NCBI RefSeq assembly: GCF_964188315.1
Contig: NC_135661.1
Location: 51,770,001-51,834,000 of the forward strand
Length of the DNA stretch: 64,000 nucleotides
Reading direction: 5' to 3'
Source: Podarcis muralis
Taxonomy: Eukaryota
The translations under genes and the position numbers were made by a program. Shown one piece after another: positions 46,851-64,000 of this stretch; the first letter of the stretch is position 1; every line of letters starts with the position of its first letter. The notes under the pieces were generated by a model. It was not told the origin of the DNA. It searched no databases and saw only the letters and a program-made list of their open reading frames with translations.

Positions 46851-49800
46851 ATAAATATACTTATAGATTAGTAGCTAGTGGCCCTCCTGATGTTGCTGAA
46901 ATTCAGCTCCCATTGCCCTCTAACCACTAGTCATGCTGACTCATTGAATGTTGCGCATGAATAACTACAAAAGTGTGCATACCAATTTTTGTGTACAACA
47001 GGTACAGAGGTTGTATACTTGCTGAATTCAACATGTGAATAATACCCTCTATGATGCTGCTTTAAATGTATAGTGCAGATGGGCGTTTATATCTGCAGCA
47101 GGGGTGATTGGTTTTTTTATGTTTCATGAGAAGAGAAAACAGAAAAGGGGGAGATTGCAGAAAGAGAAAGCGCTGCCTTACCCAACAGATTATCCTGAGT
47201 GAAAGATCCCTGCTTTGCAGGAATTCTGTGTACTGCAAAACACACCAACACACCAACGCAAACCCAAAACATCCCTCCCCCCATATTACATGATCTGGAA
47301 TCAAATGTGGGACAGTTCCCCCCCTTCCAGGGCAATGCAGAGGTATCAGGCAGGCCCTGCCTCCTTCTACCCACCTTCCTCCCAGGTGCTGGCCTCGCCT
47401 TCAGCTTCATAGAAGAGCTATTAAAAGCTGGCCAAAGCTGTTTTCGTTTGCCACAGTCTCCCTTGACACCTCTCAGACCTGCCTCTTCCCCTGCCCTCCT
47501 GCCAGCAGCATCCATTAAATTACTATTTCAAGGATGTAACAAGAGGCTTCATTTATATATTTCCAAGCATTCAGCAAGCTGCTTTCTGTATCGTACATTA
47601 GGACAAATGGTACCCATAATAATATAAAATGCTTGGGAACTTGCAAAAAGGCAAGAAATATCCCCCCACCCAAGTACATTGTGTCCATTGACCCGATAGA
47701 CTCACAGTAATTAGAGTGATGAGGCAGGGCCAGATTTTAAGGGGGATTTATTTACTGGGTGAAATTCTGCAAATCTGCTTGGAGAGCAAGCAAATTTGCA
47801 TGTGGAGTTAAATCAGATATCTTGGAAGAACTCGATTCTGTTCCTTTTGATGGTGGTCACAACTGAAACAGCCCCGCAATGTAATTATAGCTTGCTCTTT
47901 ACACTGGCTAGAATAAAGTCTGGATTCTTGCATTGCAAGAAAAACAGATCCAACAAAGCAGACTTAGTAGACACCTAATCAAGTCTGACTCATTTGAAAT
48001 CACTTAGATAGCCAGGTGTGGCTGAATAAATGCAGTAAGAACATTTGAGGGCACTCCACTCAGTTCTGTGTCTGGTGTGACCAAAGGTTCCACAGCCCAG
48101 AATCCTCTGCAACCCACTAAGGATTCCTCAGCAGAGAAGACAATGTGGAATGAGTTCCCTGGATGAAGAAAGCTTGAGAATGCTTGGCTTAAGGTGCAAC
48201 AGTTGGCTGACAGTTAAGAGTTGCAGGAGTGAGTAATGTGCTATTTTCATGTAAAGTGTTTAAGTCCAAGTTGATTGCCCCCCTACCATCCTCTTCTGCA
48301 AAACATGAAAAGAAAAACCCCCCTCTATTTTAGACAACTAGCTTTTAAAATAGGAACCAATTTCACATGGCTTTCTTAAAAAAGCATGCATAAACCCAAC
48401 CTTTTGCATATAACATGAGGTCACAGGCAAATTAATGTTTCCAAAGATAAACCTGAGAAAAGTGTGTGATAGGATGGCCATGTGTTCTCCATTGCAGAAG
48501 AGAGTCCTCTAATTTAATTTCATCTGTTCTTGAAGGACTGTCTAGTCCCAGTTCAGGTTCAAGAGGGTGGAAGCAGAGTTGAAGCTGCCCATTAACAGTG
48601 AGCTCCTTAACAGCAGACTGAGCAGGCAGAGCTCAGCTGGCCACAAAGCCTTACACGTTACAACAGCGAGCACTAGTTCAACCGGAATTAATGTACATTG
48701 CTTCTAAATTTCCATGTATGTAAACACATTTGCCTATGAACATTTTACCCATCCTTTTTGGAGGCAATGTAAGAAGTGGCCATCATGTGTGGAAACACAT
48801 ATTTCCAAATGCACTAGAAAGAAATTTAAGCTCCAATTTAATGCAACAGCATTTCTCAGAAAGTGCGTTCCTGCACCTATGACTAAAATGAGGACCAGGC
48901 AGAGTGAACGACTGAGCATATATTTTTGGAAGGTCATTACTGTGTTATCATTAGTGCAAGTAATTCTTACTATAAGGCCATAGCGTCTGCATCAGATTTT
49001 GGTCCTTGCTCTGTCAAATTCAGTGTAAAGGGGACACCTACTGGTAGGATGGGTTTGTGGCACATTTCTTAGGGCTGCCTACTGGGGAACCTGCAGCCTT
49101 GTTGATATTGCTGGACCACAACTCCCATCACCCCAGCCCACATAGGCAATGCTCAGGGATGATGGGAGTTGTAGTGCAGCAACATCTGCTGTGGTTACTG
49201 TGGAACGGTGCCATCAGGAAACCAGCTTTTTCAGTTTTCCAGAGAAGCAGCTGTGTTTGCTGAAAGAGACCGAGAGCTTCACAGCACTTGAAAGTGGCTT
49301 TCCCCAACATGGTGCCCTCCAGATGTTTTGAACTACAGATCCCATCAACCCTGGTTATTGGCCATGAGGCTGGCCCTGATGGGAGCTGGCATCTAGCAAC
49401 CGCCGGAAGGCCACAAGTTCTCCATTCCTGCCACAGACAGAACTTTCACATCACCTTACCCAGAATGCTTTTGAGCAGAGAAGATTTGCACTGAAAGGCC
49501 AATCAAAGGTTGAGGAATCCAGTGAGGTAGACACATGTATTGTAGGGGGATTCAACTAGATGACACTTTGGACCCCTTCCAACCCTACAGTTCTATGATT
49601 CTAACTGCCCAAAGACAAGTTGAGACAAGCATGCACAGACCCAGGAGAGTGAAGCTGAAAACACCTGCTAAACATTTAATTGCTTCATATCTGTATCAAA
49701 TATAAAATAGAGAGCGGAAGGCAAGTTCATAACAGAAAGGTTATTGGAAATAAGAACCGCCCAACTCACACTAACTTATTTGTGTCTTTTAAAAACGATA

Positions 49801-49929
49801 TGCAAATTGTTGTTGACTGTATGGTGAAGGAAACTTGCAGAACCTTTTCAGTGTGACATCTCTGCAGGTTTCCAATCCAGGGTTAACATCAATCTAGAGA
49901 AAGTTCAAGAAGGCCAGGGTTGTTGTTTT

Positions 49930-51242
49930 TTCCTGCAAGCATCTTTTTATTTATTATATAAAGAAGCATACACCATCATTTGACATGGGAGGGAGAGGCT
50001 GATTCTCTCCTTTAAGTACTACTCCAAGTCGTATGCTCTTAGCAAAAAGAAAGTAAGACTAGACTGCATATTCAGGTACCTAAGAGCCTCTTGCAAAAAT
50101 GGGCTCCTTCTGGTTTCTTCTGCTGTTATTGCACATTTTGAGAAAAGTCCTGGATCAAGGCACGGTAAAAACAAAATCATTTAGTGCTTCTACAGTAGAT
50201 GTTTCAGCACACGCTACGCAACATAAAACTATATTCTTTGAACACATATATACATACTCACATAAAAAAAGAGTCATGCACTAATTAGGGTGAGATTTCA
50301 ACTTCTCTGGTTGCTTCATAATATACAAATAAAGAATAATGTTGTAAACAAATGGCATGCACATAAACTAAAGCAAAATATGCTTTATACAATATCTGAG
50401 AGCTATGATGCTTAAATAAAACAAAATATAATTTACTAGTCCTCAATGTTTATGTGCCATTCTTGTCCTACTGAAATTCTTTGAAGTTCTGGATCTTTCT
50501 TCGTTTGGTTTACAGGTTGGCAGCTTGAATGTTAGGAGACAGATATGGCTTTATTTCATTTACTTACTTGTGTCATACCCAACAAAATGATACATTTCAT
50601 TTTTATTTTTTTTTAAAAGAAACTAAAAAGCTTTTTCTGCAATTTCATTTGGATACAGCTTTCCAAGTTATTCTCTAGTGGAGTAAAGGAAACAATATAA
50701 ACATTCAAACAAAGTTGTTTTTTTTTTGCCCAGCCACATTTCAGGAAAACAGGCTTCCACTAGCCAACTTTCAAGGCAAGGGCAACCCCCACCCCTCCCT
50801 GCCGCCAACAACTGCAACAGCAGCAACAACAAAACTTTTGGCAAGTTTGGATTCAAAATGAAATGAAAATTTGAAGAATTCTACAGGCTTCGGTTTCCTC
50901 TCCAAACTGATACACAGAAATAAAGTTAAATTAAAAATACATCTGTTGTGGTTACAACTGGTGAAGTGCTACAGATTTATCTCCAAATTAAGTGGGGGGT
51001 GGGGGATTTTCATGGCAACGCTGCTGAAATCAAACATCCTAGCACTATTTTTTTTTGGGAGGGGGGAGGGAGGTGTATTTCTGTCCCACTCAGATGAAGA
51101 CACTTGCGAGGATTGTTTCCCAGGCACATCAGGAGGAGAAGGCACTTTTGAGTGAGGGAAGATGGTGTTCTTAAAGAAAGGGGTGAATTTTGAGCAGGGA
51201 TTGTCCTCACTCCTGCCCACCCCACAGAAGGTCCAGCCTCAG
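49930..51242 (-). other. Probable ESRP2 3' UTR
   Basis: AT-rich, repeat-poor region after the terminal-exon stop. Minus-strand AATAAA at 50602-50607, 50550-50555 and an overlapping pair at 49946-49955. The site actually used is not determined. Confidence 0.5.
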
Positions 51243-51401
51243 TTAGATCAGGCAGAGTTCCACACAGTGTCTTCCCAAGTGGCATCCACTTCTCTCGGCC
51301 ACGGCTTTCTTTGCCGAGTCCAGGTTGGGGAAAGTGACCAGGGCTTCTCCGCTGGGCTGACCACTGAAGTTGTAAAGCAGGAGGATGGAGTCTCCATGGA
51401 G
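51243..51401 (-). CDS. ESRP2: ESRP2 terminal exon, conditionally coding: second half of a fourth RRM
   Basis: Long pyrimidine tract and ccttgcag|CTC acceptor in phase 0. Encodes LHGDSILLLYNFSGQPSGEALVTFPNLDSAKKAVAERSGCHLGRHCVELCLI*, containing the GxPSGEAxV signature of hnRNP F/H/ESRP/RBM12-type RRMs. Confidence 0.8.
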   Translation of the reverse strand, partial: LHGDSILLLYNFSGQPSGEALVTFPNLDSAKKAVAERSGCHLGRHCVELCLI

Positions 51402-51566
51402 CTGCAAGGATGGAGCAGAAGGGTCAGAGTGGGAAGGCTTGGACCCTGAGAGATTGAGGAGAGGAGGAGGAGAGAGAGAAGGACCACACCTGGAGAGCCA
51501 AGCTCCAACACAGCACCTTGCAACCCCAACCCTCACTGAAAGCAGTTGTCACCACTCTTGGGGATT

Positions 51567-51810
51567 ATAGAAGAAGAGCTTGGATTTGATATCCCGCTTT
51601 ATCACTACCCGAAGGAGTCTCAAAGCAGCTAACATTCTCCTTTCCCTTCCTCCCCCACAACAAACACTCTGAAGTCTCTCAGCCCCACTCACCTCACAAA
51701 GATGTGTGACTAGCCCAAGGTCACCCAACAGCTACATGTGGAGGAGCAGAGACGCGAACCTGGTTCACCAGATTACGAGTCTACCGCTCTTAACCACTAC
51801 ACCACACTGG
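51567..51810 (-). mobile_element. MIR-like (CORE) squamate SINE
   Basis: Minus-strand head ccagtgtggtgtagtggttaagagcggtagactcgtaatctggtgaaccaggttcgcgtctctgctcctcc and (ttc)n tail. A related plus-strand copy lies at ~60395-60570. Confidence 0.65.
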
Positions 51811-52529
51811 CATCTTGGCAATTGTGACTGGACTCCATTGGGGAAGAGGAGGAGAGCAGTCAATGGGAAACGGGTGACTGTACTGATGCTATTCTCAAGA
51901 ACAGAACAGAAAAACCTAGGAAGCTGCCTTATACCGAGTCAGACCATTTTGTATCATCTACAATGCCTGGAAGCCATTCCCCAGGATTTCAGGGCAAGGT
52001 CTTTCACAGCTCTACCTGGAAATGTTGGGAGTGGAACCTGGGACCTTCTGTATGCAGAGCAGATGCTCTGCTGCTGAGTTACATCCCTTCCCCAATATGA
52101 TTTACACTACGTCAGACTGCCTTGTCCAGGGATTGTGAGCCTGTGGCTCTCCAGCTGCTGCTGGGCTACAGCTCCATCATCCCTGACCATAAGCCATGCT
52201 GGTTGCAGCTGAAAAACAGCTAGAGACCAACCTGATGTTATGCTTATGAAGGGCAGCAAATCCTTTCTAGTTTGGGATAATTCAGTCCCCACTGGTAGTA
52301 GGCCTCTGCTTTTCAGGGCAGAGAACTTTCCCAATCCCATATCTGAGAACTTAAGAAGTATCTGCTGGATCAGGCCAGTGGCTCATCTAGTCCAACACCC
52401 TGTCCTCACAGATCTCCATGGGACAACTGCAAGCTGGACATGAGTTCAACAGCACTCTGGCACACTTGTGATTCCCTGTAACTGGTATTCAGAGGCACGA
52501 TGCCTCTGACAGTGGAGGCAGAACAGTGC

Positions 52530-52870
52530 CTTATCCTGCATGAATGTGGCTAATCCTCTTTTAAAGCCATCCAAGTTGGTGGCCATCACTGCATCCAGTG
52601 GCAATGAATTCCATATTTTCACTATGTGCAGTCTGGATTAAATACTTCTCTTTGTCTGCCCTGAATTTTCCATGAGTTCTAATGTTATGTGGGCGAAAAA
52701 CCTTCCTCCATCCACTTTCTCCATGCCACACTCCATGCCTCTTACCCTTTTTCTCTATACTCAAAAGGTCCAAATGTTCACAGAGGAGTTGTTCCATCCC
52801 ACTGATAATTCTGGTTGCCCTTTTCTGAACCTTTTCCAACTCTACAATATCCTTGAGGTGAGAAGACCCC
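52530..52870 (-). mobile_element. Degenerate CR1 LINE 3' fragment
   Basis: EKVQKRATRIISGMEQL, plus GCSDGHQLGWL*KRI-type CR1 3' sequence. Confidence 0.75.
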
Positions 52871-53284
52871 CCTGAAATGCACAGTGGCCAGAATCTAGGA
52901 CTTCAATCTGAGATTAAATGCTTCTTCTCTTTATCATGAGTGGCTTTCTCCAGAAGATTTCCTGACCTTCCTTATGTGAAACTAAGATGATCAGTAAAAG
53001 ATTAAAATGTGCATGGGCAGACACACATGAATGTGCCAGGTGTCAAGAGATAATACCTCACGAGAAATAACTATTATGCACACAAAAACAGGGGCGGGGG
53101 GGGGGGAGAAACCTGGGGTGCTAGGAAGGAACCATCCCACCATCTCTCCTGGAGAAAGGCTTTCCTTTGAACCCACTGTCAGGGCTGATAACTCCTGCAA
53201 GAGTTCTCATGTACAAAGCACCACACAATCCTTAGCCATGAAACACAGGCCCTTCCTAGTCCAGAGAAGGCAGAACCTGAAGCT

Positions 53285-53355
53285 GGGGAGGGGGAGGGAG
53301 AGGGAGAGGGAGAGGGAGAGGGAGAGGGAGAGGGAGAGGGAGAGGGAGAGGGAGA
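53285..53355. repeat. (GGGAGA)n hexamer repeat
   Basis: Direct reading, about 10 perfect units. It is (TCTCCC)n on the ESRP2 sense strand. Confidence 0.92.
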
Positions 53356-53673
53356 AAGCCCCATGTCTAATGAGTAGTTGCTCCTACCCATGAGTTTGAG
53401 TTACACCCATATTCTAATAGGCTACAGTCCCATATAAGGCAGAGTTAGCAGTCTTTTCAATGACCAAGACTGAACTTGGATTGAAATCCCCAGGTGGTAT
53501 TCAACAGTAGTCATACTCAGAGTAGATTCAATGAAACTAATGAGCATGTCTAACTACAGTAATACTCTTAATTTGCTCTGTGTTAGGGCTTAATTGAATA
53601 CAACCACAGTGTCCTAAAGCAAAGGGCTAGGACATGGCTGTAGAGATTTTCAAAGTATGTTCCAGGGAACCCT

Positions 53674-53674
<1 letters not shown>

Positions 53675-53713
<39 letters not shown>
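53675..53713. repeat. (GT)n microsatellite
   Basis: Direct reading, ~19 units. It is (CA)n on the ESRP2 sense strand. Confidence 0.92.
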
Positions 53714-53717
<4 letters not shown>

Positions 53718-55775
53718 TACATATATTGAAGCTTTCTAAGAGTTACTTAATGGGACATTTCCCTGAAAAGCATCCTGGCCACATTACTGAGCTTTCCCTT
53801 GCCATATGCAGATGTAGATGACTTGCTTCAGAATAGGCCTACCTTCTGTCTTTGTGGGCTATCTGTGCATTCTAAAACATGCCTCAGGGCTCTGCAACAG
53901 GGGTGGGGGACTTCAGGTGGTGCTGGACAACAGCTCCCATTATCCCCAGCTAGCATGAATCACAGCCAGGGATGATAAGAGCTAGAATCCAGCTACATAC
54001 ATCTGGAGAGCCACATGCTCCCCTGAGCACATATCCTAAAATGTGTGCAGCTTACTTGACAAAATTAGTCAGTGTGGAAAGGCACCACTGAAGGTAGACC
54101 ACCATTAAATTGGAGTGGAGAAAAAGAAAAAAGATGGATATAGTCCTACAATGATGGTGCTCAGATATGTCAATTAACACTAGCCTGACGTTCTGGCTTG
54201 GACATCACATCTTTCTTTAGCACATGCACACACACTCACACACTCCACAAGGTCAACTTAAAACAAGCAAACAAATGCCTACAGTTGAGATTTGACACAC
54301 AGGCTCATACCTACGAGTTTGAACAATACAGTAGCAAAATATGGGTTTGTCCACACAAGTGGTTGCTTGATGTTACTGGAGAATGAAATCTGATACATGT
54401 GTGTTATCCAGTCCCAGAACCCCCACATTTAGCAGCGGCCACAACCCACACTGGTTGCCATATTATGTCTGCAGGATCTGAACAGGAGGTTTCATGCACA
54501 TGGTTGGCTGCAGGATGTGCTCCTCAGCAATAAGGTGATAAAATGACATCTGCAGCATTAAAAATCCCCAGGTGTTTCAGGCAACACAGTCTTTCTGGAG
54601 GAGAGTGATGCCAAATGAAACTCAAACTATATGTAAAGTTAATCCTTCTCAACAGATTTCCTGTGTACTTCTTCGGATAGTTCCCACTGGGGTAGGTCAA
54701 ACTGTCCTGGGGCTTTAGTGCTTCACATGCTGCTTTGGAGATTCTCATGACAAAATACTCCTTGCACAGGCAGGTAGCATATTGGGGGGAAATGAAGAAA
54801 ATACCCAGGGTTGGGGTTTTTGCAGTTACACGCATCGTTCATATGAGTTCCCTTAGCTCAGTGTGTGTGTGTTCGTGTGTAAATTGGAGGCAGACTTAAA
54901 CCAGTATGTGTTTTCTCAAAATGAGCTCTCAGAACAAAGGGCTGGCATCTTCCTTGCAAAGTTGTCAATAATGCAACCTAGTAATGCTGCCTCCCAGGCA
55001 CCCAGCACTTCCCCTGAGGATTGGCCTCACACCTGCCAGCTGTAGTACTGGCTGCATCATCAAAGGAACTTGGTGCTTCCTTATTCCCTTGGAATGATGC
55101 AGTCTCAGTATTGTAGAAGAGGGAAGAGAGATCAACGCTGTGCACTTCGGACAAGGGGGTGGGGAACTTGTTGCCCTCCATATGTTGCTGGACTTTTAAC
55201 TCCCATCAGCTCCAGCTCACACAGCCAGTGGTCTTGGATGATGGGAGTCGGAGTCTAGCAACATCCGGAGGGTCACAGGTGCCCCCTTCTCCTGCTCTAC
55301 ATATAACCACAAAGCATGGTAAATTGGAAGAACTGGTCATGACCATTGAAACTTGTCCTTCAGTGCCCCAATTGATAATGTTTTGCCTTCATTGCCTTAC
55401 GTCCAACAGCAGAAAGATCCTGTTACATGCATATATGCCAGAAAGCAGTCAATATGATCATGTTAGCTTAAAACAAGAGAACCCTTACGGAGTGGAGAGA
55501 GAATGCCAAGCAGACAAAATCGCCAGCATTCCCTTTCTCCTCCAGAGGTCTCCAGCATCATTGCCACCATTAGGTTAGTTGATTCATGCCAGGCGCCGAA
55601 GCAAGGGAATGTTAGTGAGCAGAGTCCCCACCACAAGCTAGGAAGGGAGGATGCAAGGAGGAAAAAACCAATTTCCCACCACTCCCAGCCGATCATTTTG
55701 CCCTCTTTCCAATCACCACCAAAAGGCTCCACCTTCTGCCAATCTGAGCTTACCTTCACTGGAGGTTACAAACAC

Positions 55776-55865
55776 TTACAAACAAACCCAGTCTTTCGGT
55801 GCTTGTAACACACTCCTTGCTTGGTCGTTGATCTGAATAAGGCCATTGTAGTCGTCAGGTGCATA
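55776..55865 (-). CDS. ESRP2: ESRP2 stop-containing penultimate exon, coding part (exon extends to 55754)
   Basis: ctgtag|TAT acceptor. Encodes YAPDDYNGLIQINDQARSVLQAPKDWVCL* (ESRP1/2 C-terminal WVC motif). Donor GAAG|gtaagc at 55753. Not in the ORF track. Confidence 0.92.
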   Translation of the reverse strand, partial: YAPDDYNGLIQINDQARSVLQAPKDWVCL

Positions 55866-58800
55866 CTACAGTACAAGTGTGATACATAAGGTCAGCAAGA
55901 GAAGGGGCAGGTCATCTTGTTACCAGCAAGCCACACAGACCAGCACTTGCAAATGTCATTAGGGAAGGGGTGGGGAGGAGTCATGGCTACAATTGTCAGA
56001 GGAAGATACAAGTCAGGCACTGGGTCCACCTAGCTCAGTGTCGTCCACTCTATTCCGGCTCCAGTATTTCGTGCAGAGAAGGGTTTTAACCTTCGCCTGC
56101 TACCTGAGCCTTTCAACTGGAGAGAGAAGGGATTGAACCTGGGACCTTCTGCATGCAAAGCAAGTGCTATTTTACCCAATAAACTATGTTGGCTGCCTGT
56201 CTCCAGGATCTCAGAAGCAAGGGTCTGCCCCAGCACAATGTTTTGAATGGGGATGCCAAAGAGCAGCGTACATTCTCAGGCCCTTTGTTTCTTTGGGAAG
56301 CCCCTTGTCCCCATGCCCTGGAGGCATCCACCTGAGGTGCCAGAATCTATGTAAGCAAAAGCATGGCACAACCTACAGGACACCATCAGAAGTCTAGCTA
56401 ATGCTTGGGCACCTTTAGATCACATTCCAGGTAGCACTTATGTTTTTAAAGTCACCCATAAGCCTCTTTACAAAAGCTGCAACTGTCAGAGATCCAATCT
56501 ATAAAGCTGGGTTAAGCAACAGCAAGGCATACTATGTTACAAGCCCAGAGTGTCCTGGGAAAACTAAAATGTATTCTTGGATTGTGACAAATAAGAAACA
56601 AACAAACAAACAAAAACTGAATTAAGTCACATTAAAAACATTTTAAAAATAGTCCATGGATCTACAGAGCAGAGCTAGTTTCTGACTTGGGCAACTTGAC
56701 CAGTCAGACCAAGCCCTGGAATTAACACCAGATGTATTAGCAAACTATGAACACTCATTAATGGCCTAGTGTTAAAATGCAACCCCGTGTCATCTGTCAA
56801 ACACTGCCAAGCACCAGCTGTTAAATATTATAAGGGTGATGAAAGCAAACACCAAAATATAATTTAATTGGATGACAAAAGGTTGATTTCAAAATACAAC
56901 CTGTGAATGGTTCACAAATATTGGACATCAAATCTCAGAGCGGTTTTGGAAGCAAATTGGGAAACACAGTTCTAGAATTGTAAGAACTAGACGCTCCCTC
57001 CCCCCCAAAAAAGTTCATTTTTCCAAAGCTTCAAGTTTCACACCCAAAGAAAGAACAACATACAGAAGAGGTTCTCCACTCCTCCATGCCCTCAATCCTA
57101 TATAGACAAAACCATAAACTAGGAGATGTTTCTGAAATGCATCAAGAACAAGTCAGGCAAGATGCTAGGTTTCTAAAGAAACCCAGAGCAGAGAAGACAT
57201 CTTTGTGCAAGCATCTATTTGAAAGAAAAGGAAGTCCACCACAATGAGGTCTCCTGTCCTGTTAAGTGGGGACCAGAGATAGAGAATGCATATGCCTCTG
57301 GCATTTTGCCATCACTTTGTGTCACTGCCCCCCTCAATCTTTCTGCTTCTCAGTGATATCTGGTCATCATGTCCTATTGGAAAGCTGCAGGGGCAGACAC
57401 AATAAGACCCCTTTTACTTCCTGGGAAGGTGAGGCAGTACTAAAGCTCAGTATAGGTTGGAAAAATAAGCACATATATGTGGAAGTGGATAGCGGTCTTT
57501 AAGCGCTTGTTTATTCATGAGAAGACATGGGGAAGAAACCTTCACCAGGTGTCATTTTGAAACCAGATGGTGGACCAAAATGCAACTCAGACATGATTTC
57601 ATCTATTCTTTTTTTTTGCATGGGTTCAGCTCTTCTCATTATACCATTGCCGAACTTGACATGAGGGTTCCCAGGGTGGGATGGCAGTCTTTTTAGCATT
57701 TGGATGCCAGCCACCATTTTGAATCACGATGGCAGACCAAAATGTGACCTTGGTGTGACTTCACCCCAATTTTTGGTGTGATGGGTCCAAATTTACAACC
57801 TGCACTATCCATTTAAAAATCACATTTTTTTTGTTTCTAAAGATACATGGGCAATGCCACTCACTCTTCACTAGTGAATAAATAGAACAGACGCTATACT
57901 ATTTTGCTGCAAGGATGTATTATAACCCTTCCACCAGCCGTACAGAATCAAGCTTCAATACTACTGCAGTGGGAAGTCAGAATTTATGTTTCAGCTTTGT
58001 GCACCATGCTACAAACTGCCTTATGCTGCACAGTAAGAACTGTGACGCTGTAATGGGCCCAGACAGCGCCCTTGAGAAATGCAGAACAGTGTAATCTAGA
58101 GTCATTTAGCTTCTATGCAAGATGTCACACTTTCAAACTGTCAGGGCAACACCCTTTAAATAACCTCCCCTGCATCCCAACCCGATTCAATCAATCATTC
58201 TCACACTGATCCACACTGGCCAATGGCAGCAATGCCTCCAAATACAGCACTAAGTTCTAAGCATGACAAACAGCAAGAAGATAATTCAATTAGATGTAGC
58301 AGCGCAGGCCGAGTTCAGAAATAGATTACAGAATGAGATAAGGAGGAATTCATTTTTCGAGAGACCCTAGAATAGGGTAGGGCTGCTTAAGGAGATTTGG
58401 GGGAAGATTATAATTTGTAAGAACACCTGTTTGGCAAGAATGAGGACCTAAAGAAGGATGATGAAAGCACACAAGTATTCTCACATAAAAATGGTGGTTT
58501 GGAGGAAACAAAACAGAAGATAATGCACACTGAAAATAATCAATTATTCCCAATTTTTAAAAATCATTTTTACAGCTGCAACTTTGAATTGATCAAAAGC
58601 ATCTGGATAGACTAAAACAGGGGTGGGAAATCTCAGGCCTGGGTGGGAAATCCTCCCAGGTTGGAATGTTTCCTTGATCTCTGACAATGCCTCTTGCATA
58701 CCTGGAGGATAGAGGGCTGTGCTGAGTGTATGGAGAAACTAGCCAACCATAACAAAGGTTAAAAATAAACCACATTCTTGCTCTATCCACTTTTGCCTCG

Positions 58801-59670
58801 GGCATGCAGTCACCAGAAGACTGCCCAGAAGGGAATATGGCCCTTGGTTTGAAAATGGTTCCCCATCCCTAGACTTAAAAAGAAAAGAGAGCTGTTCCCA
58901 ATAAGTTCAACATAAGGTTGCTGTTAGTCTCTCCCCCCTCCCCATTTAATGCAAATGTTTTGAAAACTGAATGGCAAATTTTGTCTTATAAGGCGTTCAT
59001 CTTTCCTCTCTGCAAGATTTGTCCATTTGCAAGCCTTGTCTGTATCATCTTTTCCCCTTAGAAGAATGGCTTCTCATGTGTATGCAAATTGGATGATAAT
59101 ATAAAGATGGAATTAGCCCTACATAGTTGATGGGACACCATTTCATTTACATGTATGACTGGCAAAGGAAACAACTGCTGGCAATTATAAAAGAAGTGGG
59201 ACCTGAAAGAAGATGTTGAAGTGTATCCTTTCCAGCTAGAAGGAGTACTCCTGATTCCAAACTGGCCATTTTCTCCAAAACAAGGCATTTCACTCCCAAT
59301 CCCCTTTTCCAGCAGATACCCAACATTCTGTGGTTACCCAGATACGAAGCCCTTGTGCTATTTTTGTTGGTTGGTGGTTTGTTTGTCTTTGTACCCTTAG
59401 GGTCCCTTCTTCATTTAAAACAAATTCTGCAAATGTTGGGATTGTCCCAGGCATGAAGATTCTTCCTTCTCAGTGGCCCTGGTTTGACTTCCTTCCTGTT
59501 AGCCTTCACTAGACCTGAACAGGAGTGATCCTCACTGCAACGTTTTGCTGCAGGATCCGCTTGATTAAATGTGGAAACTGCATGATGCAAGAAGTTCCGG
59601 CTGCAGCTCTCAGCTGAGAGGCTGCCTGGTGACACAGACGGTGAAGCAAAGGTAGAAACCCAAGACTAAC

Positions 59671-59848
59671 CTGATATCCCTGGAAGAAACTGAGGATTTC
59701 CTTCATTCCTGCATTATAGGGCAATCCCTGCATCCGGACAAGGGCACCAGGCTGAGGCAGCATTGGAGTGTGCGTGGCTGAGGCAGCGGCTGCAACTGCT
59801 GCTTGGGGTGCTGTGATGTACCCTACTGTGGTCGGGGACACCGGTGGG
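59671..59848 (-). CDS. ESRP2: ESRP2 exon ending in a half-RRM ([25 protein letters not shown])
   Basis: tttccag|C acceptor after a 94-nt intron, and a phase-0 donor CAG|gttagt. Confidence 0.94.
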
Positions 59849-59942
59849 CTGGAAAGAAAGGAAAATGGTTGGTCCAAGGGCACATGCAGGTGCAAAAAGT
59901 TCACCCTATCTGGAAAAGTTACCAGCCTAAACAGGATAGTAC

Positions 59943-60162
59943 CTGGGGTAGTAAGCTGTGTAGTTCATGTAAAGTTGAGCAGCCTGAGTTGGGTAGTAGG
60001 TCACAGCTGGACTAGCGGCGGCGGCAGCGGCAGCAGCGGCAACAGCAGCCGAAGCCTGCTGGGACCTGGTTTGAGGCAAGAGCGCTTGCGACTGATATAA
60101 TGCCGCTTCTGTTGGGATCACGGCGGCAGCTGTCTGGAAGGCATAGGCTGGAGGAGAAAGAC
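59943..60162 (-). CDS. ESRP2: ESRP2 exon (Ala/Tyr/Pro-rich linker with poly-Ala)
   Basis: atccacag|GT acceptor and AG|gtacta donor. Encodes [23 protein letters not shown]...[11 protein letters not shown]...[10 protein letters not shown]. Confidence 0.93.
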
Positions 60163-62725
60163 CTGTGGATAAAGATCACAAAACAAAACCCCAAAAGCAA
60201 GTTAGCAAAGACAGAATCCATTGGACAGGTGAGGCCCCGGCCCTCTGTCCCAGGAGCTGCTGGCGGGAAAACTTCCAAGTGGAGTTCCAGCCTTTTGAGT
60301 AGGTATAAAATTGAGGGGTAGGTTGCTAGTTACTACCATCATTGCTACTAGTGGCTGCCATTACTTGCTGGTTGCTACTATCATGGCATTAGGGGCTAGA
60401 ATGGTGGACAAGGAACCTGGGAGACCCTGGTTCAAATCTCCACACAGAGCCTACTAGGTGATCTTGGGCCAGTCACTGCCTCTCAGCCTAACCATACCGC
60501 ACAGAGTTGTTGTCAGGATAAAGTGGGGAGGGGGAGAACTGTGTCTGCCACATGAATGTAATAAATAAAGTTTTGGGCAGCTATGGGAAATTAACTGGTG
60601 TGCTGGTAAACTTTATGTCGGCTTACATTTCCTTTTATATTTTAAGCGAACTGTTACTTGTTGAACAGTTAGGGATATTGTGATATCAATACATTTAATT
60701 ACACATTATGTTTATCATGCTGTTGTATTTTGACTTTTTTTTGTAAACCACTTTGAGTACACATCTGTGGAAAATGCTATATACAAACAAACCGCATGAC
60801 CGAAGTGCAAATGTGGAGTACAAGTTCACACTTTGAAAGGTGAAACTGGTGAGCAAAAGCTTATGTGATGGGCAGTGCATGGTCATCTGTTCAGAATCCT
60901 CATCAATGAGTTTCGCAGGTTTTTTGTCCTTTCTCGGGAGTAGCAAGGCAAGTTTCTGGTTCTCATTGTTTTAAGTCAGTGGTGGGGATCCTGTCCCCAC
61001 AGGCTTATTTTGGCCATTTCCCCCAAGCCATGTCCTTGATGTCATACGTGACATGTGCCTCCCTCCCAAAAGCTGATTTTACTATTGATCAGCAGCACCT
61101 GAAAATCCCCATGCCTTTGACACGCATGGTTTGTTTCACACAGGAAAGGAAAAGGTGACAGATGACTCTGCCCACCAGTTAAAATGGCCCATTGGGCTTT
61201 GGGAAGGTCAGGATCTAGCCCACTGACTAGGCCCAGCATCTTGATTTAAGTATAAACATGAGTGAACCATTTCTTCTAATATGTGTTAAAAGCCAGCAAA
61301 TGTATTGCTGAGTTACTTTACTGAAAGTAGTTCACGGATGTGTGCGTACATTGCAGTATGTTAAAAGAATATGCATGCATTTGTAGGCCTTATTGTATGT
61401 TGTGCTTATTATAAATGGACCCTCATTGCATATTCTACTTTATTGGAAAGCTTGGTGTGTCCTCTTGGGGCTTTATTTTCTGGCTGTTGTTTTTCCTCCT
61501 GTCTGTAAAAAGCAACTTAAGATTGGTAGGCTTGGCAGCATAAGCTCAACAGTCACTGTGGCATCAAAACAGCAATAGTTGCTTTTAGCCCTGGAAACAA
61601 CTGGTCTATATTTTTTCACAATCCTTGTCTCAACTACATTTTAAGCCATGAGCTGTCTAGCAAAATGTGGAAGTCACCTACCCATACTTTCAAGTTCTGG
61701 CTCTTAAGCCACCCTTTTATTGTCCTTCAACAAAACAAAACCCAAATGCCAAGCTGCAGATATCATTGCTTTGGTGTGCAATAAATCCAGCCACACTGTT
61801 TATAAAGTGTTTTAAGACCGTGAAAATGCATTGTTTCATCACTCAGTTTTGGTCCATCAAAACCCTTGTCCCAATAGATGCTCTGTCTTCAACAACAAGC
61901 TGTGTCCCTGAAGACCAGCACCTCCCTACTGCAAAGAGGTAGTAGGAGATTAATCTCATTGGCAGCTGCAGAGCAAATTGCTTCAATTAAAAAAAGAAAA
62001 GCACAAAAAATGTAACTGCCAAGCAAGCTCTGCTAAAGGTGAAATTTATTGCAGAGATTTTTTGGGGTAATGAGGTTAACACAGTCCCCCAATGAAAGCA
62101 AAGTACATAATAATTTGGGGGGCATCTCTAGCTACCAATACTCCCCAAATATTTTAAAATACAGGGCTGCAGGAAACCAATGCAACCCTTCATCTAACAC
62201 TACACAATGAAACTAAGCATAGTTACTTAAAAGTATGTTCCACTGGCTGCAATCCTATGTAGACTTTCCTGGGAGTAAGTCCGACTGAACTTATCAGGAC
62301 TTAACTTTCTAATAAACGTACATTGCACTGTTAGCTGGTTAGAATAGTTCAGGCCAGTTTTAACTGGCAAGCGTTATTTTTTATTACATTTCTGTCTTTC
62401 CTTTCTTCCATTATTGAACTTCCTACAGACATTATTTGGTGTTAAGATTGGCTTGGGATGGGGGCTCTCTTCTTAATTCCACCACCACCACCTGAAGCGT
62501 GGGGAATGGTGGTAACCCCAAATTGTGGAAATCACACTCCACAAAGATGCACCTACACACTATCATGACTCAGCTTCCACTGTATTCCCATCTGTCAGGG
62601 AGTCTTAAGCTGTCATTCCTGCATTGCTGGGGGGTGGACTAGATGACCCTTGGTCCCCCAACTCTACAATTCTATGGCTGCATGATTCTAAGCTGAAGCT
62701 GCACCTTCTTGCCACAGCTTTTGAC

Positions 62726-63070: not shown

Positions 63071-63815
63071 GTTTATTTTTTGGGGTGGGGGGGCACTATT
63101 TTGTTTTATTTAACCTATTTTGTGCTGCTTTTTTAAGAATTGTTATGCATTTTATGATTTATTTTTTACAAATGGCTTTACAGTACTTGTTTTTAATTGT
63201 AGGATTATATTGTTGTGACCCGCCTTAGGACCTTATGGTGAAAGGCAGGTAACAAATCTTATAAACAAACATGCAAAATAAATGAAACTCAGGATAGGGG
63301 TTCATGTGGATTAAAAGAGGGTAGGACAAATTCATGGAGGATAAGCAAATTTGCTCTATCATGTGCCCTCAAGACCATGCCCTGGGTATGCTTATATTAG
63401 GGCTGTGAAAGTTTATTACAGATATCCTTCCCTTCTAGCAATGAATGACAGTCTCCTCCCCCCTAAAAATAATAATAAATAAGTTACCCTTGACTTCCTC
63501 AAAAAAGGCACCTACATTGAGAGGTTGCCGATACACATACTCAATTCATTAAGATAAATAAATCAAAAGTATAGTTAAAAGGCAGGTGATCAATCAGCTA
63601 AAATTATTGAAGCGGTCGACAGCCCTAACAGCTTCAGAATCACATCTGATTTGGGGCCCAGCTTCCAATCCCAGCCTATTCACGGAGGAGTGATTACAGA
63701 CTGCAACTCAACCCAAGACAGAGAGGGCAAGACCCCCACCGCAGCGCCATCAGCACCTACCAGAGCGTCCCCCGTTAGCAGCACAGAAGAGAGCAGAAGA
63801 ACTTGGGAGACTTAC

Positions 63816-64000
63816 ATGGTAACTTACATGGTGGCGGAGACAAGCCACTACGATTTAAAGTGCCACCCATTAAAACAAAATTCATCTCCTCTCCTGAACA
63901 CTGGAACACTTCCACGTAACGGTCCTTCATCATCTTCTTGTGACACTTCTGGGCCACCAGGAAAGCCCGGTCAGAAGATTTCATCTGGATAAAAGCATCG
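63816..64000 (-). CDS. ESRP2: ESRP2 exon encoding the end of RRM3 and GLSPPP(CKLP); truncated by the window edge, alternative end at 63828
   Basis: Encodes [57 protein letters not shown], followed by two CAT|GTAAGT donors 12 nt apart. Confidence 0.93.

What the first reader, a model, noticed from the sequence alone, without database searches (positions are those of the whole stretch)
51243..59848. Hidden fourth RRM in ESRP2, completed only when the stop-containing exon is skipped (3-RRM/4-RRM splice switch)
Seen: exon 59671-59848 ends in phase 0 with the first half of an RRM ([25 protein letters not shown], beta1-alpha1). The next exon (55754-55865) stops translation (YAPDD...WVCL*), leaving the half-domain orphaned. 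The terminal exon has a phase-0 acceptor at 51401 and an intact 52-codon frame, LHGDSILLLYNFSGQPSGEALVTFPNLDSAKKAVAERSGCHLGRHCVELCLI*. Joining 59671 to 51401 gives a 77-aa unit, the size of a full RRM. Its last 34 residues align without gaps to this gene's own RRM3 end ([34 protein letters not shown] vs EALVTFPNLDSAKKAVAERSGCHLGRHCVELCLI). Known: ESRP1/2 are described as three-RRM proteins. GxP(S/T)GEAxV is the loop-3/beta3 signature of the hnRNP F/H-GRSF1-ESRP-RBM12 RRM group, and the recalled RBM12 C-terminal RRM (EILDFFYGYQ...GMPTGEAMVAF) resembles this unit. Inference: reptile ESRP2 keeps an ancestral RRM4 that is switched on or off by one cassette exon, and the same sequence serves as 3' UTR in the canonical isoform. 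The loop-5 Arg-Tyr of qRRMs is His-Cys here, so RRM4 may bind RNA differently or act as a protein-interaction module. Automated annotations of non-mammalian ESRP2 may already contain this isoform; I cannot check that.
Basis: partly seen in the sequence, partly recalled or inferred. Interest (0 to 1): 0.9.

Follow-up and report, generated by a model that had tools for sequence, protein, structure and literature searches.

The report
ESRP2 alternative fourth RRM exon
The lizard ESRP2 gene carries a conserved last exon that completes a fourth RNA-binding domain when a small stop-containing exon is skipped; databases already hold this isoform for many vertebrates, and this animal's RNA-seq showed only the three-domain form.

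Summary
On the minus strand, exon A (59671-59848) ends in phase 0 with half an RRM. Exon B (55754-55865) stops translation after ...WVCL. Exon C (acceptor at 51401) holds an open 52-codon frame ending at 51243.

The open frame is a real coding exon:
- It passes the Pfam RRM_1 cut-off on its own.
- The joined unit of the nearest lizard relative folds as a full beta-alpha-beta-beta-alpha-beta RRM (pLDDT 95.8).
- dN/dS among five squamates is about 0.12.
- Nucleotide identity falls from 83-89% to about 50% just outside the frame.

It is not hidden or specific to reptiles. The exon-B-skipped isoform is already annotated for ESRP2 in squamates, birds, caecilians, ray-finned fishes, sharks and marsupials, and for ESRP1 in gar and skates. 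The reviewed zebrafish Esrp2 entry (Q7ZVR8) contains this RRM. Spliced transcript contigs from a duck-type and a carp-type run carry the A-C join.

In three RNA-seq libraries of the window's species only A-B (73-91 reads) and B-C (64-73 reads) junctions were listed, so exon C served there as 3' UTR. I found no paper that mentions a fourth ESRP RRM. Verdict: real, ancient and functional-looking, known to databases but apparently not discussed in the literature. The switch itself is unshown in this species.

The parts
59671..59848 (-). ESRP2 exon A. Its last 25 codons (59745-59671) encode beta1-alpha1 of RRM4 and are shared by both isoforms. The donor is gt at 59670-59669.
   Evidence: Translation. 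Junction 59671/55865 has 73/91/75 reads. dN/dS of the last 25 codons among five squamates is 0.008.
55754..55865 (-). Exon B, the stop-containing cassette. It has 29 codons (YAPDD...WVCL), TAA at 55778-55776, 22 nt of UTR and a gtaag donor. It produces the 3-RRM C-terminus.
   Evidence: The exon is conserved in squamates and a marsupial with the stop 19-24 nt before the junction. dN/dS is 0.14, and dS is lowered (0.29) in its last 15 codons.
51243..51401 (-). Start of terminal exon C. Its 52 codons plus TAA encode beta2-beta3-alpha2-beta4 of RRM4. This stretch is 3' UTR whenever exon B is included.
   Evidence: Pfam RRM_1 hit. Junction 55754/51401 has 73/64/67 reads. dN/dS is 0.06-0.21 among squamates, with a mean of 0.12. 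Identity is 83-89% inside the frame against 47-58% in the next 156 nt.
49950..51242 (-). Rest of terminal exon C. It is 3' UTR in both isoforms and runs on below 49950.
   Evidence: RNA-seq depth is continuous at 36-157 from 51342 down to 49950.
55786..55787 (-). In-frame GT directly after the Trp codon of exon B. Some gene models in other species (P0157, P0158, P0180) use it as a donor to read exon B into exon C.
   Evidence: Sequence; models. No such joint was listed in the reads here, so these models are probably prediction artefacts.
55560..55753 (-). GGU/UGG-rich stretch at the start of the intron after exon B.
   Evidence: There are 21 GGT/TGG in the first 200 nt against an intronic mean of 7.5, which is the top 0.6% of windows. 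Other squamates and the marsupial have only 5-12, so the stretch is not conserved.
63790..63999 (-). Upstream ESRP2 exon with the end of RRM3 (DAFIQMKSS...VEVFQC), cut by the window edge. The tblastn match runs a little past the exon's 3' end.
   Evidence: tblastn with the relative's protein P0341.

Best explanation
Exon C is the true last coding exon of an ancient four-RRM form of ESRP2. Exon A ends in phase 0 with beta1-alpha1 of a hnRNP F/H-type RRM. If exon A is spliced directly to exon C, 52 more codons supply beta2-beta3-alpha2-beta4 and the protein ends in a complete fourth RRM. If the 112-nt exon B is included, translation reads 29 other conserved residues (...WVCL) and stops 22 nt before the last exon junction. 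By the established 50-55-nt rule that is too close to trigger nonsense-mediated decay. The mRNA is therefore stable, encodes the familiar three-RRM protein, and carries the RRM4 half as 3' UTR. Both endings are kept by purifying selection, so both proteins are probably used. Shown: the exon anatomy, the two inclusion junctions in this species, the fold, the selection, the wide annotation, and A-C spliced transcript contigs in a bird-type and a fish-type run. Inferred: that this lizard makes the A-C mRNA in some tissue or stage, and that the two proteins differ in function. In squamates and birds the loop-5 Arg-Tyr used by qRRMs for G-tract binding is His-Cys. RRM4 there may bind RNA differently or serve as a protein contact.
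For: Anatomy.
Pfam: RRM_1 on the 52-aa piece scores 21.3 bits, covering profile positions 28-67 of 70. In Pogona ESRP2 isoform X1 the joined unit is the best RRM_1 stretch of the whole protein (681-749 = profile 2-69 of 70; RRM_1 scores 69.6 bits for the whole protein).
Fold: AF2 on the joined unit of the nearest relative (72 of 78 residues identical to the window) gives pLDDT 95.8, pTM 0.83 and E-H-E-E-H-E order. Nearest solved structures are the RBM12 C-terminal RRM (2EK6/2EK1, 39% identity, TM 0.91), then Glorund, hnRNP H, GRSF1 and ESRP1 qRRMs.
Selection: dN/dS of exon C is 0.06-0.21 among squamates, 0.12-0.16 to a bird, 0.20-0.27 to a marsupial and 0.22-0.35 to a fish. Conservation drops sharply outside the frame.
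Annotation: the isoform is annotated in Pogona, Anolis sagrei, snakes, ducks (cluster of 575 sequences), parrots, caecilians, bichir, sturgeon, gar, over 60 teleosts, sharks and rays, and marsupials. ESRP1 with RRM4 is annotated in gar and skates. Swiss-Prot Q7ZVR8, zebrafish Esrp2, residues 658-735, matches at 67% identity and TM 0.99.
Transcripts: contigs L005 (2343 nt) and L008 (3237 nt) carry exon A joined directly to exon C in a full-length ORF.
Deep ancestry: proteins with an ESRP-like N-terminal domain and a C-terminal RRM that best matches this piece occur in Chromosphaera and several other protists.
Against: In the window's own species the A-C junction was not seen. Three bulk RNA-seq libraries gave 73/91/75 A-B reads and 73/64/67 B-C reads. 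My estimate from the depth tables is that exon B depth is about 0.9-0.95 of exon A depth. No loose end at 59671 or 51401 was among those listed. The lists are cut, so fewer than about 25 reads per run could have gone unshown. The tissue of those libraries is unknown, and no other tissue could be laid. The loop-5 Arg-Tyr and the loop-1 Arg are replaced, so RNA binding by RRM4 is not assured. The structure was predicted for a relative's sequence, not the window's own join.
Confidence: 0.8

Rival explanations
1. Relic in this lineage. The lizard always includes exon B, the RRM4 half is never translated, and its open frame has simply not decayed yet.
For: Only inclusion junctions were listed in three libraries, and exon B depth is about equal to exon A depth.
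Against: Pairwise dN/dS of the window against four other squamates is 0.11-0.21 at dS 0.31-0.70. There are no indels, and the stop sits at the same codon. Identity falls to about 50% just past the frame. The reference's one odd residue (Asn 26) is Ser, the conserved residue, in essentially all RNA-seq reads (259 of 260) and in the X9 contig (position 51325).
Confidence: 0.12
2. The stretch is conserved as an RNA element of the 3' UTR (regulatory sites or structure), not as protein.
For: It is 3' UTR in the dominant mRNA.
Against: Substitutions pile up at synonymous sites (mean pS 0.41 against pN 0.07 among squamates). The peptide is a recognisable RRM half by HMM and completes a confident fold. 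No Rfam family matches.
Confidence: 0.03
3. The four-RRM isoforms in databases are artefacts of gene predictors that prefer the longer open frame.
For: Some models are clearly forced. P0157, P0158 and P0180 read exon B into exon C through an unsupported donor, and the Amazona model is flagged low quality.
Against: Two short, intron-free contigs from sequencing runs carry the A-C join in a full-length ORF. A carp-type 3-RRM transcript contig also exists (P0267). The reviewed zebrafish entry has RRM4. Selection on the frame needs translation.
Confidence: 0.03

Closest known systems
Zebrafish Esrp2, reviewed UniProt entry Q7ZVR8 (736 aa)
   Same: Its residues 658-735 are the same C-terminal RRM (67% identity and TM 0.99 to the lizard-type model). 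Carp-family RefSeq models show the same pair of endings: 735/736 aa with RRM4 and 709/710 aa ending ...EWLCL.
   Different: The teleost tail ends ...CCE, and loop 5 is His-Pro rather than His-Cys. Papers on zebrafish esrp2 that I read count three RRMs (PMC11344038).
RefSeq/Ensembl predicted ESRP2 isoforms with the exon A-C join (Pogona X1, Anolis sagrei X2, Anas acuta X5, Sarcophilus, Mobula and others)
   Same: They have the same exon join, the same 78-residue unit and the same stop position. Identity to the window's unit is 66-72 of 78 in sauropsids.
   Different: None is identical to the window's protein. I could not tell whether this species' own annotation lists the isoform.
RBM12 and RBM12B C-terminal RRM (PDB 2EK1, 2EK6, 2CQP)
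   Same: This is the nearest solved structure (39% identity, TM 0.91, rmsd 0.9-1.0 A). It shares the ...FF.GY... and SGEA.V.F motifs.
   Different: It belongs to a different protein with a different architecture. This is paralogy at the domain level only.
qRRMs of hnRNP F/H, GRSF1, Glorund and ESRP1 qRRM2/3 (PDB 6DHS, 4QU7, 5UZM, 7VKI, 7VKJ)
   Same: The fold class is the same (TM 0.85-0.92). The GLP-aromatic loop 1 and the SGEA beta3 signature are present.
   Different: Loop 1 has Gln for the usual Arg in all vertebrate RRM4s. Loop-5 Arg-Tyr is His-Cys in squamates and birds. Arg-Tyr is kept in bichir, sturgeon, skate ESRP1 and protist homologues.
Conserved stop-containing ('poison') cassette exons of RNA-binding proteins, such as hnRNP L exon 7 (PMC6885243) and those of SR proteins (from general knowledge)
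   Same: It is a small, highly conserved cassette exon with an in-frame stop inside a splicing regulator's own gene. Synonymous change is reduced in part of the exon.
   Different: The stop lies only 19-24 nt before the last junction, so by the 50-55-nt rule the mRNA should escape decay and encode a stable alternative C-terminus. The inclusion form is the dominant mRNA here.

Membership tests
RRM domain (Pfam PF00076 RRM_1) | Profile HMM match at or above the curated cut-off | tested here: met
   The window's 52-aa half alone scores 21.3 bits against a cut-off of 20.7, on profile positions 28-67 of 70. The joined unit in Pogona covers profile 2-69 of 70 and is the protein's best RRM_1 stretch.
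RRM domain (Pfam PF00076 RRM_1) | beta1-alpha1-beta2-beta3-alpha2-beta4 fold | tested here: met
   AF2 on a 34-sequence alignment gives pLDDT 95.8 with elements E2-7, H15-21, E32-36, E42-50, H53-63, E74-77. The sequence modelled is the nearest relative's (72 of 78 identical to the window), not the window's own join.
RRM domain (Pfam PF00076 RRM_1) | Canonical RNP1 octamer and RNP2 hexamer with aromatic residues | tested here: not met
   By my reading, beta1 is LVRMQG and beta3 is GEALVTF, so only one aromatic remains. This is the usual state of the qRRM subgroup and not a sign of decay.
qRRM subgroup (hnRNP F/H, GRSF1, ESRP, RBM12) | Loop 1 R-G-L-P-(W/F/Y) | tested here: inconclusive
   The window has Q-G-L-P-Y. 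Gln replaces Arg in all vertebrate RRM4s, and the protist homologue P0007 keeps Arg.
qRRM subgroup (hnRNP F/H, GRSF1, ESRP, RBM12) | Loop 3/beta3 (S/T)-G-E-A-x-V | tested here: met
   The window has P-S-G-E-A-L-V-T-F. Gly 44, Ala 46, Val 48 and Phe 50 are nearly invariant or invariant in the alignment.
qRRM subgroup (hnRNP F/H, GRSF1, ESRP, RBM12) | Loop 5 R-(Y/F)-(I/V)-E-(V/L/I) | tested here: not met
   The window has H-C-V-E-L. Arg-Tyr is present in bichir, sturgeon, skate ESRP1, the P0157 model and protists.
qRRM subgroup (hnRNP F/H, GRSF1, ESRP, RBM12) | G-tract or GGU RNA binding through the loops | not testable with these tools
   This needs binding assays.
ESRP2 orthologue | Exons collinear with, and highly identical to, annotated ESRP2 | tested here: met
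   The ESRP2 protein of a related lizard (P0341) maps to four collinear exons of the window at 70-91% identity. Exon A is identical to the corresponding stretch of P0271, a 772-aa protein in the ESRP2 hit list.
Regulated cassette-exon switch (3-RRM/4-RRM) | Both inclusion and skipping junctions seen in transcripts of the same species | tested here: not met
   This species gave inclusion junctions only, from three libraries of unknown tissue, and the listing is truncated. Both forms exist as transcript contigs in carp-type fishes (P0222 and P0267). Both are annotated side by side in many species.

The most novel reading that the evidence does not exclude
ESRPs are ancestrally four-qRRM proteins: an exonuclease-like domain plus four RRMs, an architecture already present in protists. 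Jawed vertebrates inserted a decay-immune stop exon that lets cells choose between a complete RRM4 and a conserved 29-residue tail. The two proteins would differ in RNA targets, partners or localisation. The three-RRM picture drawn from human and mouse would then be a derived state in which placental mammals lost the RRM4 option. That would give the ESRP field an untested layer of regulation in fish, frog, chick and lizard models.
Probability: 0.4. Interest if true: 0.55.

Novelty: already known. Interest (0 to 1): 0.38.

Why it matters
ESRP1 and ESRP2 are master regulators of epithelial splicing, and work on them uses a three-RRM model taken from mammals. Most jawed vertebrates keep a selectively maintained alternative ending that completes a fourth RRM, and the standard zebrafish Esrp2 sequence contains it. 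Rescue and variant-testing experiments in zebrafish and other non-mammalian models may therefore be using a protein with an extra domain that nobody has characterised. It also explains why ESRPs end in a highly conserved 'orphan' beta1-alpha1 segment. The sequences are already in public databases. What is missing is recognition and function, not discovery of the exon.

Tried and rejected
1. Direct search for the A-C junction in this species. Both read-laying runs had to be split because the span exceeds 6,000 bases, so the junction could only appear as loose ends at 59671 or 51401. None was listed. The lists are dominated by intronic repeats and cut at about 25 reads and about 80 reads, so low-level skipping is not excluded.
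2. The cluster is enriched in the window but not conserved in four squamates or a marsupial, so it was not adopted as the mechanism.
3. In-frame donor after the Trp codon of exon B, as used by models P0157, P0158 and P0180. No read support here. It would put a 26-residue insert in the alpha1-beta2 loop, so it was treated as a prediction artefact.
4. The idea that the 3-RRM tail completes the half-domain in another way. AF2 on the 55-residue ending gave pLDDT 57.7 and pTM 0.26, so there is no confident fold in isolation.
5. Literature. Five searches on ESRP with fourth, four, C-terminal or extra RRM, RRM4 and qRRM, plus two papers read, found no mention of a fourth ESRP RRM.
6. Rfam scan of 49000-60500 found no family.
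7. The snake protein P0342 was not on record for a DNA look-up, so P0351 was used instead.
8. Placental mammals. A search with the marsupial RRM4 listed no placental protein covering it. This is only absence of annotation, because I had no placental genomic DNA to test.


Full report
OBSERVATION

- Exon A (59671-59848), read from 59847, ends ...[25 protein letters not shown] in phase 0 before a gt donor.
- Exon B (55754-55865) reads YAPDD...KDWVCL, then TAA at 55778-55776, then 22 nt and a gtaag donor.
- Exon C follows a good pyrimidine tract and ag at 51403-51402. It is open for 52 codons to TAA at 51245-51243.
- The window starts inside ESRP2. The end of RRM3, an Ala-rich linker exon, exon A and exon C are collinear with the ESRP2 protein of a related lizard (P0341).

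IS THE OPEN FRAME A DOMAIN HALF?

The 52 residues alone match Pfam RRM_1 on profile positions 28-67 of 70, at 21.3 bits against a cut-off of 20.7. A HMMER scan of 1.8 billion representative proteins found 148 RRM proteins at E<=0.001. Many of these match best at their very C-terminus.

In Pogona ESRP2 isoform X1, which has the A-C join, the joined unit covers RRM_1 positions 2-69 of 70 and is that protein's best RRM_1 stretch.

I modelled the joined unit of the nearest relative, which is 72 of 78 residues identical to the window's join, on a 34-sequence alignment. AlphaFold2 gave pLDDT 95.8 and pTM 0.83, with the order beta-alpha-beta-beta-alpha-beta.

Next come Glorund, hnRNP H, GRSF1 and ESRP1 qRRMs.

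In contrast, the 55-residue ending of the three-RRM isoform is not predicted to fold on its own (pLDDT 57.7). It is nonetheless highly conserved, with 22 invariant columns.

IS IT UNDER SELECTION AS PROTEIN?

I took exon C DNA from four other squamate genomes, a duck-type and a carp-type transcript contig, and the Tasmanian devil genome. There are no indels. The stop is at the same codon in all the tetrapods and one codon later in the carp-type sequence.

| Comparison (Nei-Gojobori) | dN/dS |
|---|---|
| Among squamates | 0.06-0.21 |
| Squamates to bird | 0.12-0.16 |
| Squamates to marsupial | 0.20-0.27 |
| Squamates to fish | 0.22-0.35 |

Pooled over the five squamates:

| Segment | dN/dS |
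|---|---|
| Exon A, last 25 codons (shared RRM4 half) | 0.008 |
| Exon B | 0.14 |
| Exon C | 0.12 |

Nucleotide identity of the window to the other squamates is 83-89% inside the frame. It is 47-58% in the next 156 nt and 46-53% in the intron just upstream. This pattern rules out conservation as a UTR element and argues against a decaying relic.

In the RNA-seq, 259 of 260 reads and the X9 contig have C instead of T at 51325. This turns the reference's unusual Asn 26 into the conserved Ser.

IS THE ISOFORM KNOWN?

Yes, in databases. Searches with the RRM4 region and cluster look-ups show the A-C isoform annotated as ESRP2 in these groups:
- Pogona, Anolis sagrei and snakes
- ducks (a cluster of 575 sequences) and parrots
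- caecilians, bichir, sturgeon and gar
- more than 60 teleosts
- sharks and rays
- marsupials

It usually sits beside a ...WVCL isoform of the same species. ESRP1 with RRM4 is annotated in gar and skates, so the arrangement predates the ESRP1/ESRP2 split.

The best Swiss-Prot structural match is zebrafish Esrp2 (Q7ZVR8), residues 658-735, at 67% identity and TM 0.99. The reviewed zebrafish sequence is therefore the four-RRM form.

Two short intron-free contigs from public runs carry exon A fused to exon C in a full-length ORF: L005 (2343 nt, duck-type) and L008 (3237 nt, carp-type). This is transcript-level evidence, unless they are processed pseudogenes.

Proteins with an ESRP-like N-terminal domain and a C-terminal RRM that best matches this piece occur in Chromosphaera, Galdieria, Chlorokybus, Acrasis and Palpitomonas. 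Similar proteins from Cyanophora, Pelomyxa, an ostracod and a nematode also came up, but their best match is not always the C-terminal RRM or the N-terminal domain was not detected. RRM4 therefore looks older than animals.

With the marsupial RRM4 as query, no placental protein covering RRM4 was listed. This fits a loss in placentals but does not prove one.

I found no paper that mentions a fourth ESRP RRM. A 2024 zebrafish/human ESRP variant study counts three RRMs (PMC11344038). The 2017 evolutionary study of Esrp does not discuss RRMs at all (PMC5703972).

WHAT DOES THIS SPECIES EXPRESS?

Three bulk RNA-seq libraries of the same species, plus one set of contigs, were laid in two pieces.

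| Junction | Reads in the three libraries |
|---|---|
| 59671/55865 (A-B) | 73, 91, 75 |
| 55754/51401 (B-C) | 73, 64, 67 |

One 2683-nt contig joins A, B and C. Exon C is transcribed continuously from 51401 to below 49950, so in these samples the RRM4 half is the start of a long 3' UTR.

From the depth tables I estimate exon B at about 0.9-0.95 of exon A depth. No loose end at 59671 or 51401 was among those listed. The lists are truncated, with floors of about 25 and 80 reads. Skipping is therefore at most a minor fraction here and may be absent. The tissue is unknown, and I had no further read-laying runs.

MECHANISM

Exon B is a conserved cassette whose stop lies 19-24 nt before the last exon junction in every species examined. 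By the established 50-55-nt rule this should spare the mRNA from nonsense-mediated decay. Inclusion then gives a stable three-RRM mRNA, and skipping gives a four-RRM mRNA.

Three features are nearly invariant among five squamates: the last 15 codons of exon B, the 22 nt after the stop, and the 12 nt before its acceptor. Synonymous divergence in the last 15 codons is about half that of the neighbouring exons. This is typical of regulated exons.

The GGU-rich cluster after exon B noted earlier (s1-184814) is real in the window but is not conserved. I do not rely on it.

RRM4 keeps the qRRM signatures GLP-Tyr and SGEA-x-V. It has Gln for the loop-1 Arg in all vertebrates, and His-Cys for the loop-5 Arg-Tyr in squamates and birds. 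Bichir, sturgeon, skate ESRP1 and the protist proteins keep Arg-Tyr. Whether sauropsid RRM4 still binds G-rich RNA is open.

VERDICT

The feature is already in public annotation and in a reviewed UniProt entry, so it is neither hidden nor new as a sequence. The switch is not demonstrated in this species. What remains of interest is that the literature I could search does not mention the domain, and that its function and regulation are untested.

Noticed in passing
window 55754-55823 and 55866-55877 (minus strand): The last 15 codons of exon B, the 22 nt after its stop codon and the 12 nt before its acceptor (CTTGTACTGTAG) are almost invariant at the nucleotide level among five squamates. dS there is 0.29, against 0.55-0.86 in neighbouring coding sequence. 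This suggests splicing-regulatory elements inside and beside the cassette exon.
   Followed up: partly
window 51325: The reference has T (Asn at codon 26 of exon C). In the three RNA-seq libraries 259 of 260 reads, and the X9 contig, have C, which gives Ser, the residue conserved in all other squamates. The reference allele is private or an error.
   Followed up: partly
window 51542-51811 and 56123-56263: These intronic repeat copies show very high RNA-seq depth on both strands, many loose ends and inverted joints. They are interspersed repeats expressed from many loci. No Rfam family matches. They swamp the loose-end tables and hide rare junctions.
   Followed up: no
L001:64880-65035 (Amazona ochrocephala ESRP2-like): Exon C of this parrot copy has an in-frame stop and many replacements, and no exon B was detected in the locus. 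The model is flagged low quality. It may be a decaying duplicate, because another parrot (Lathamus) has an intact RRM4.
   Followed up: no
It is not conserved in Anolis, three other squamates or the Tasmanian devil.
   Followed up: partly
P0007, P0029, P0034, P0023, P0055 (protist proteins): Proteins from an ichthyosporean, a red alga, a streptophyte alga, a heterolobosean and Palpitomonas combine an ESRP-like N-terminal exonuclease-like domain with several hnRNP F/H-type RRMs, the C-terminal one best matching this piece. The ESRP architecture seems far older than animals.
   Followed up: partly
window 51048-51060 and 50269: Length polymorphisms of 2-3 nt appear in the 3' UTR between the reference and the RNA-seq individuals.
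   Followed up: no
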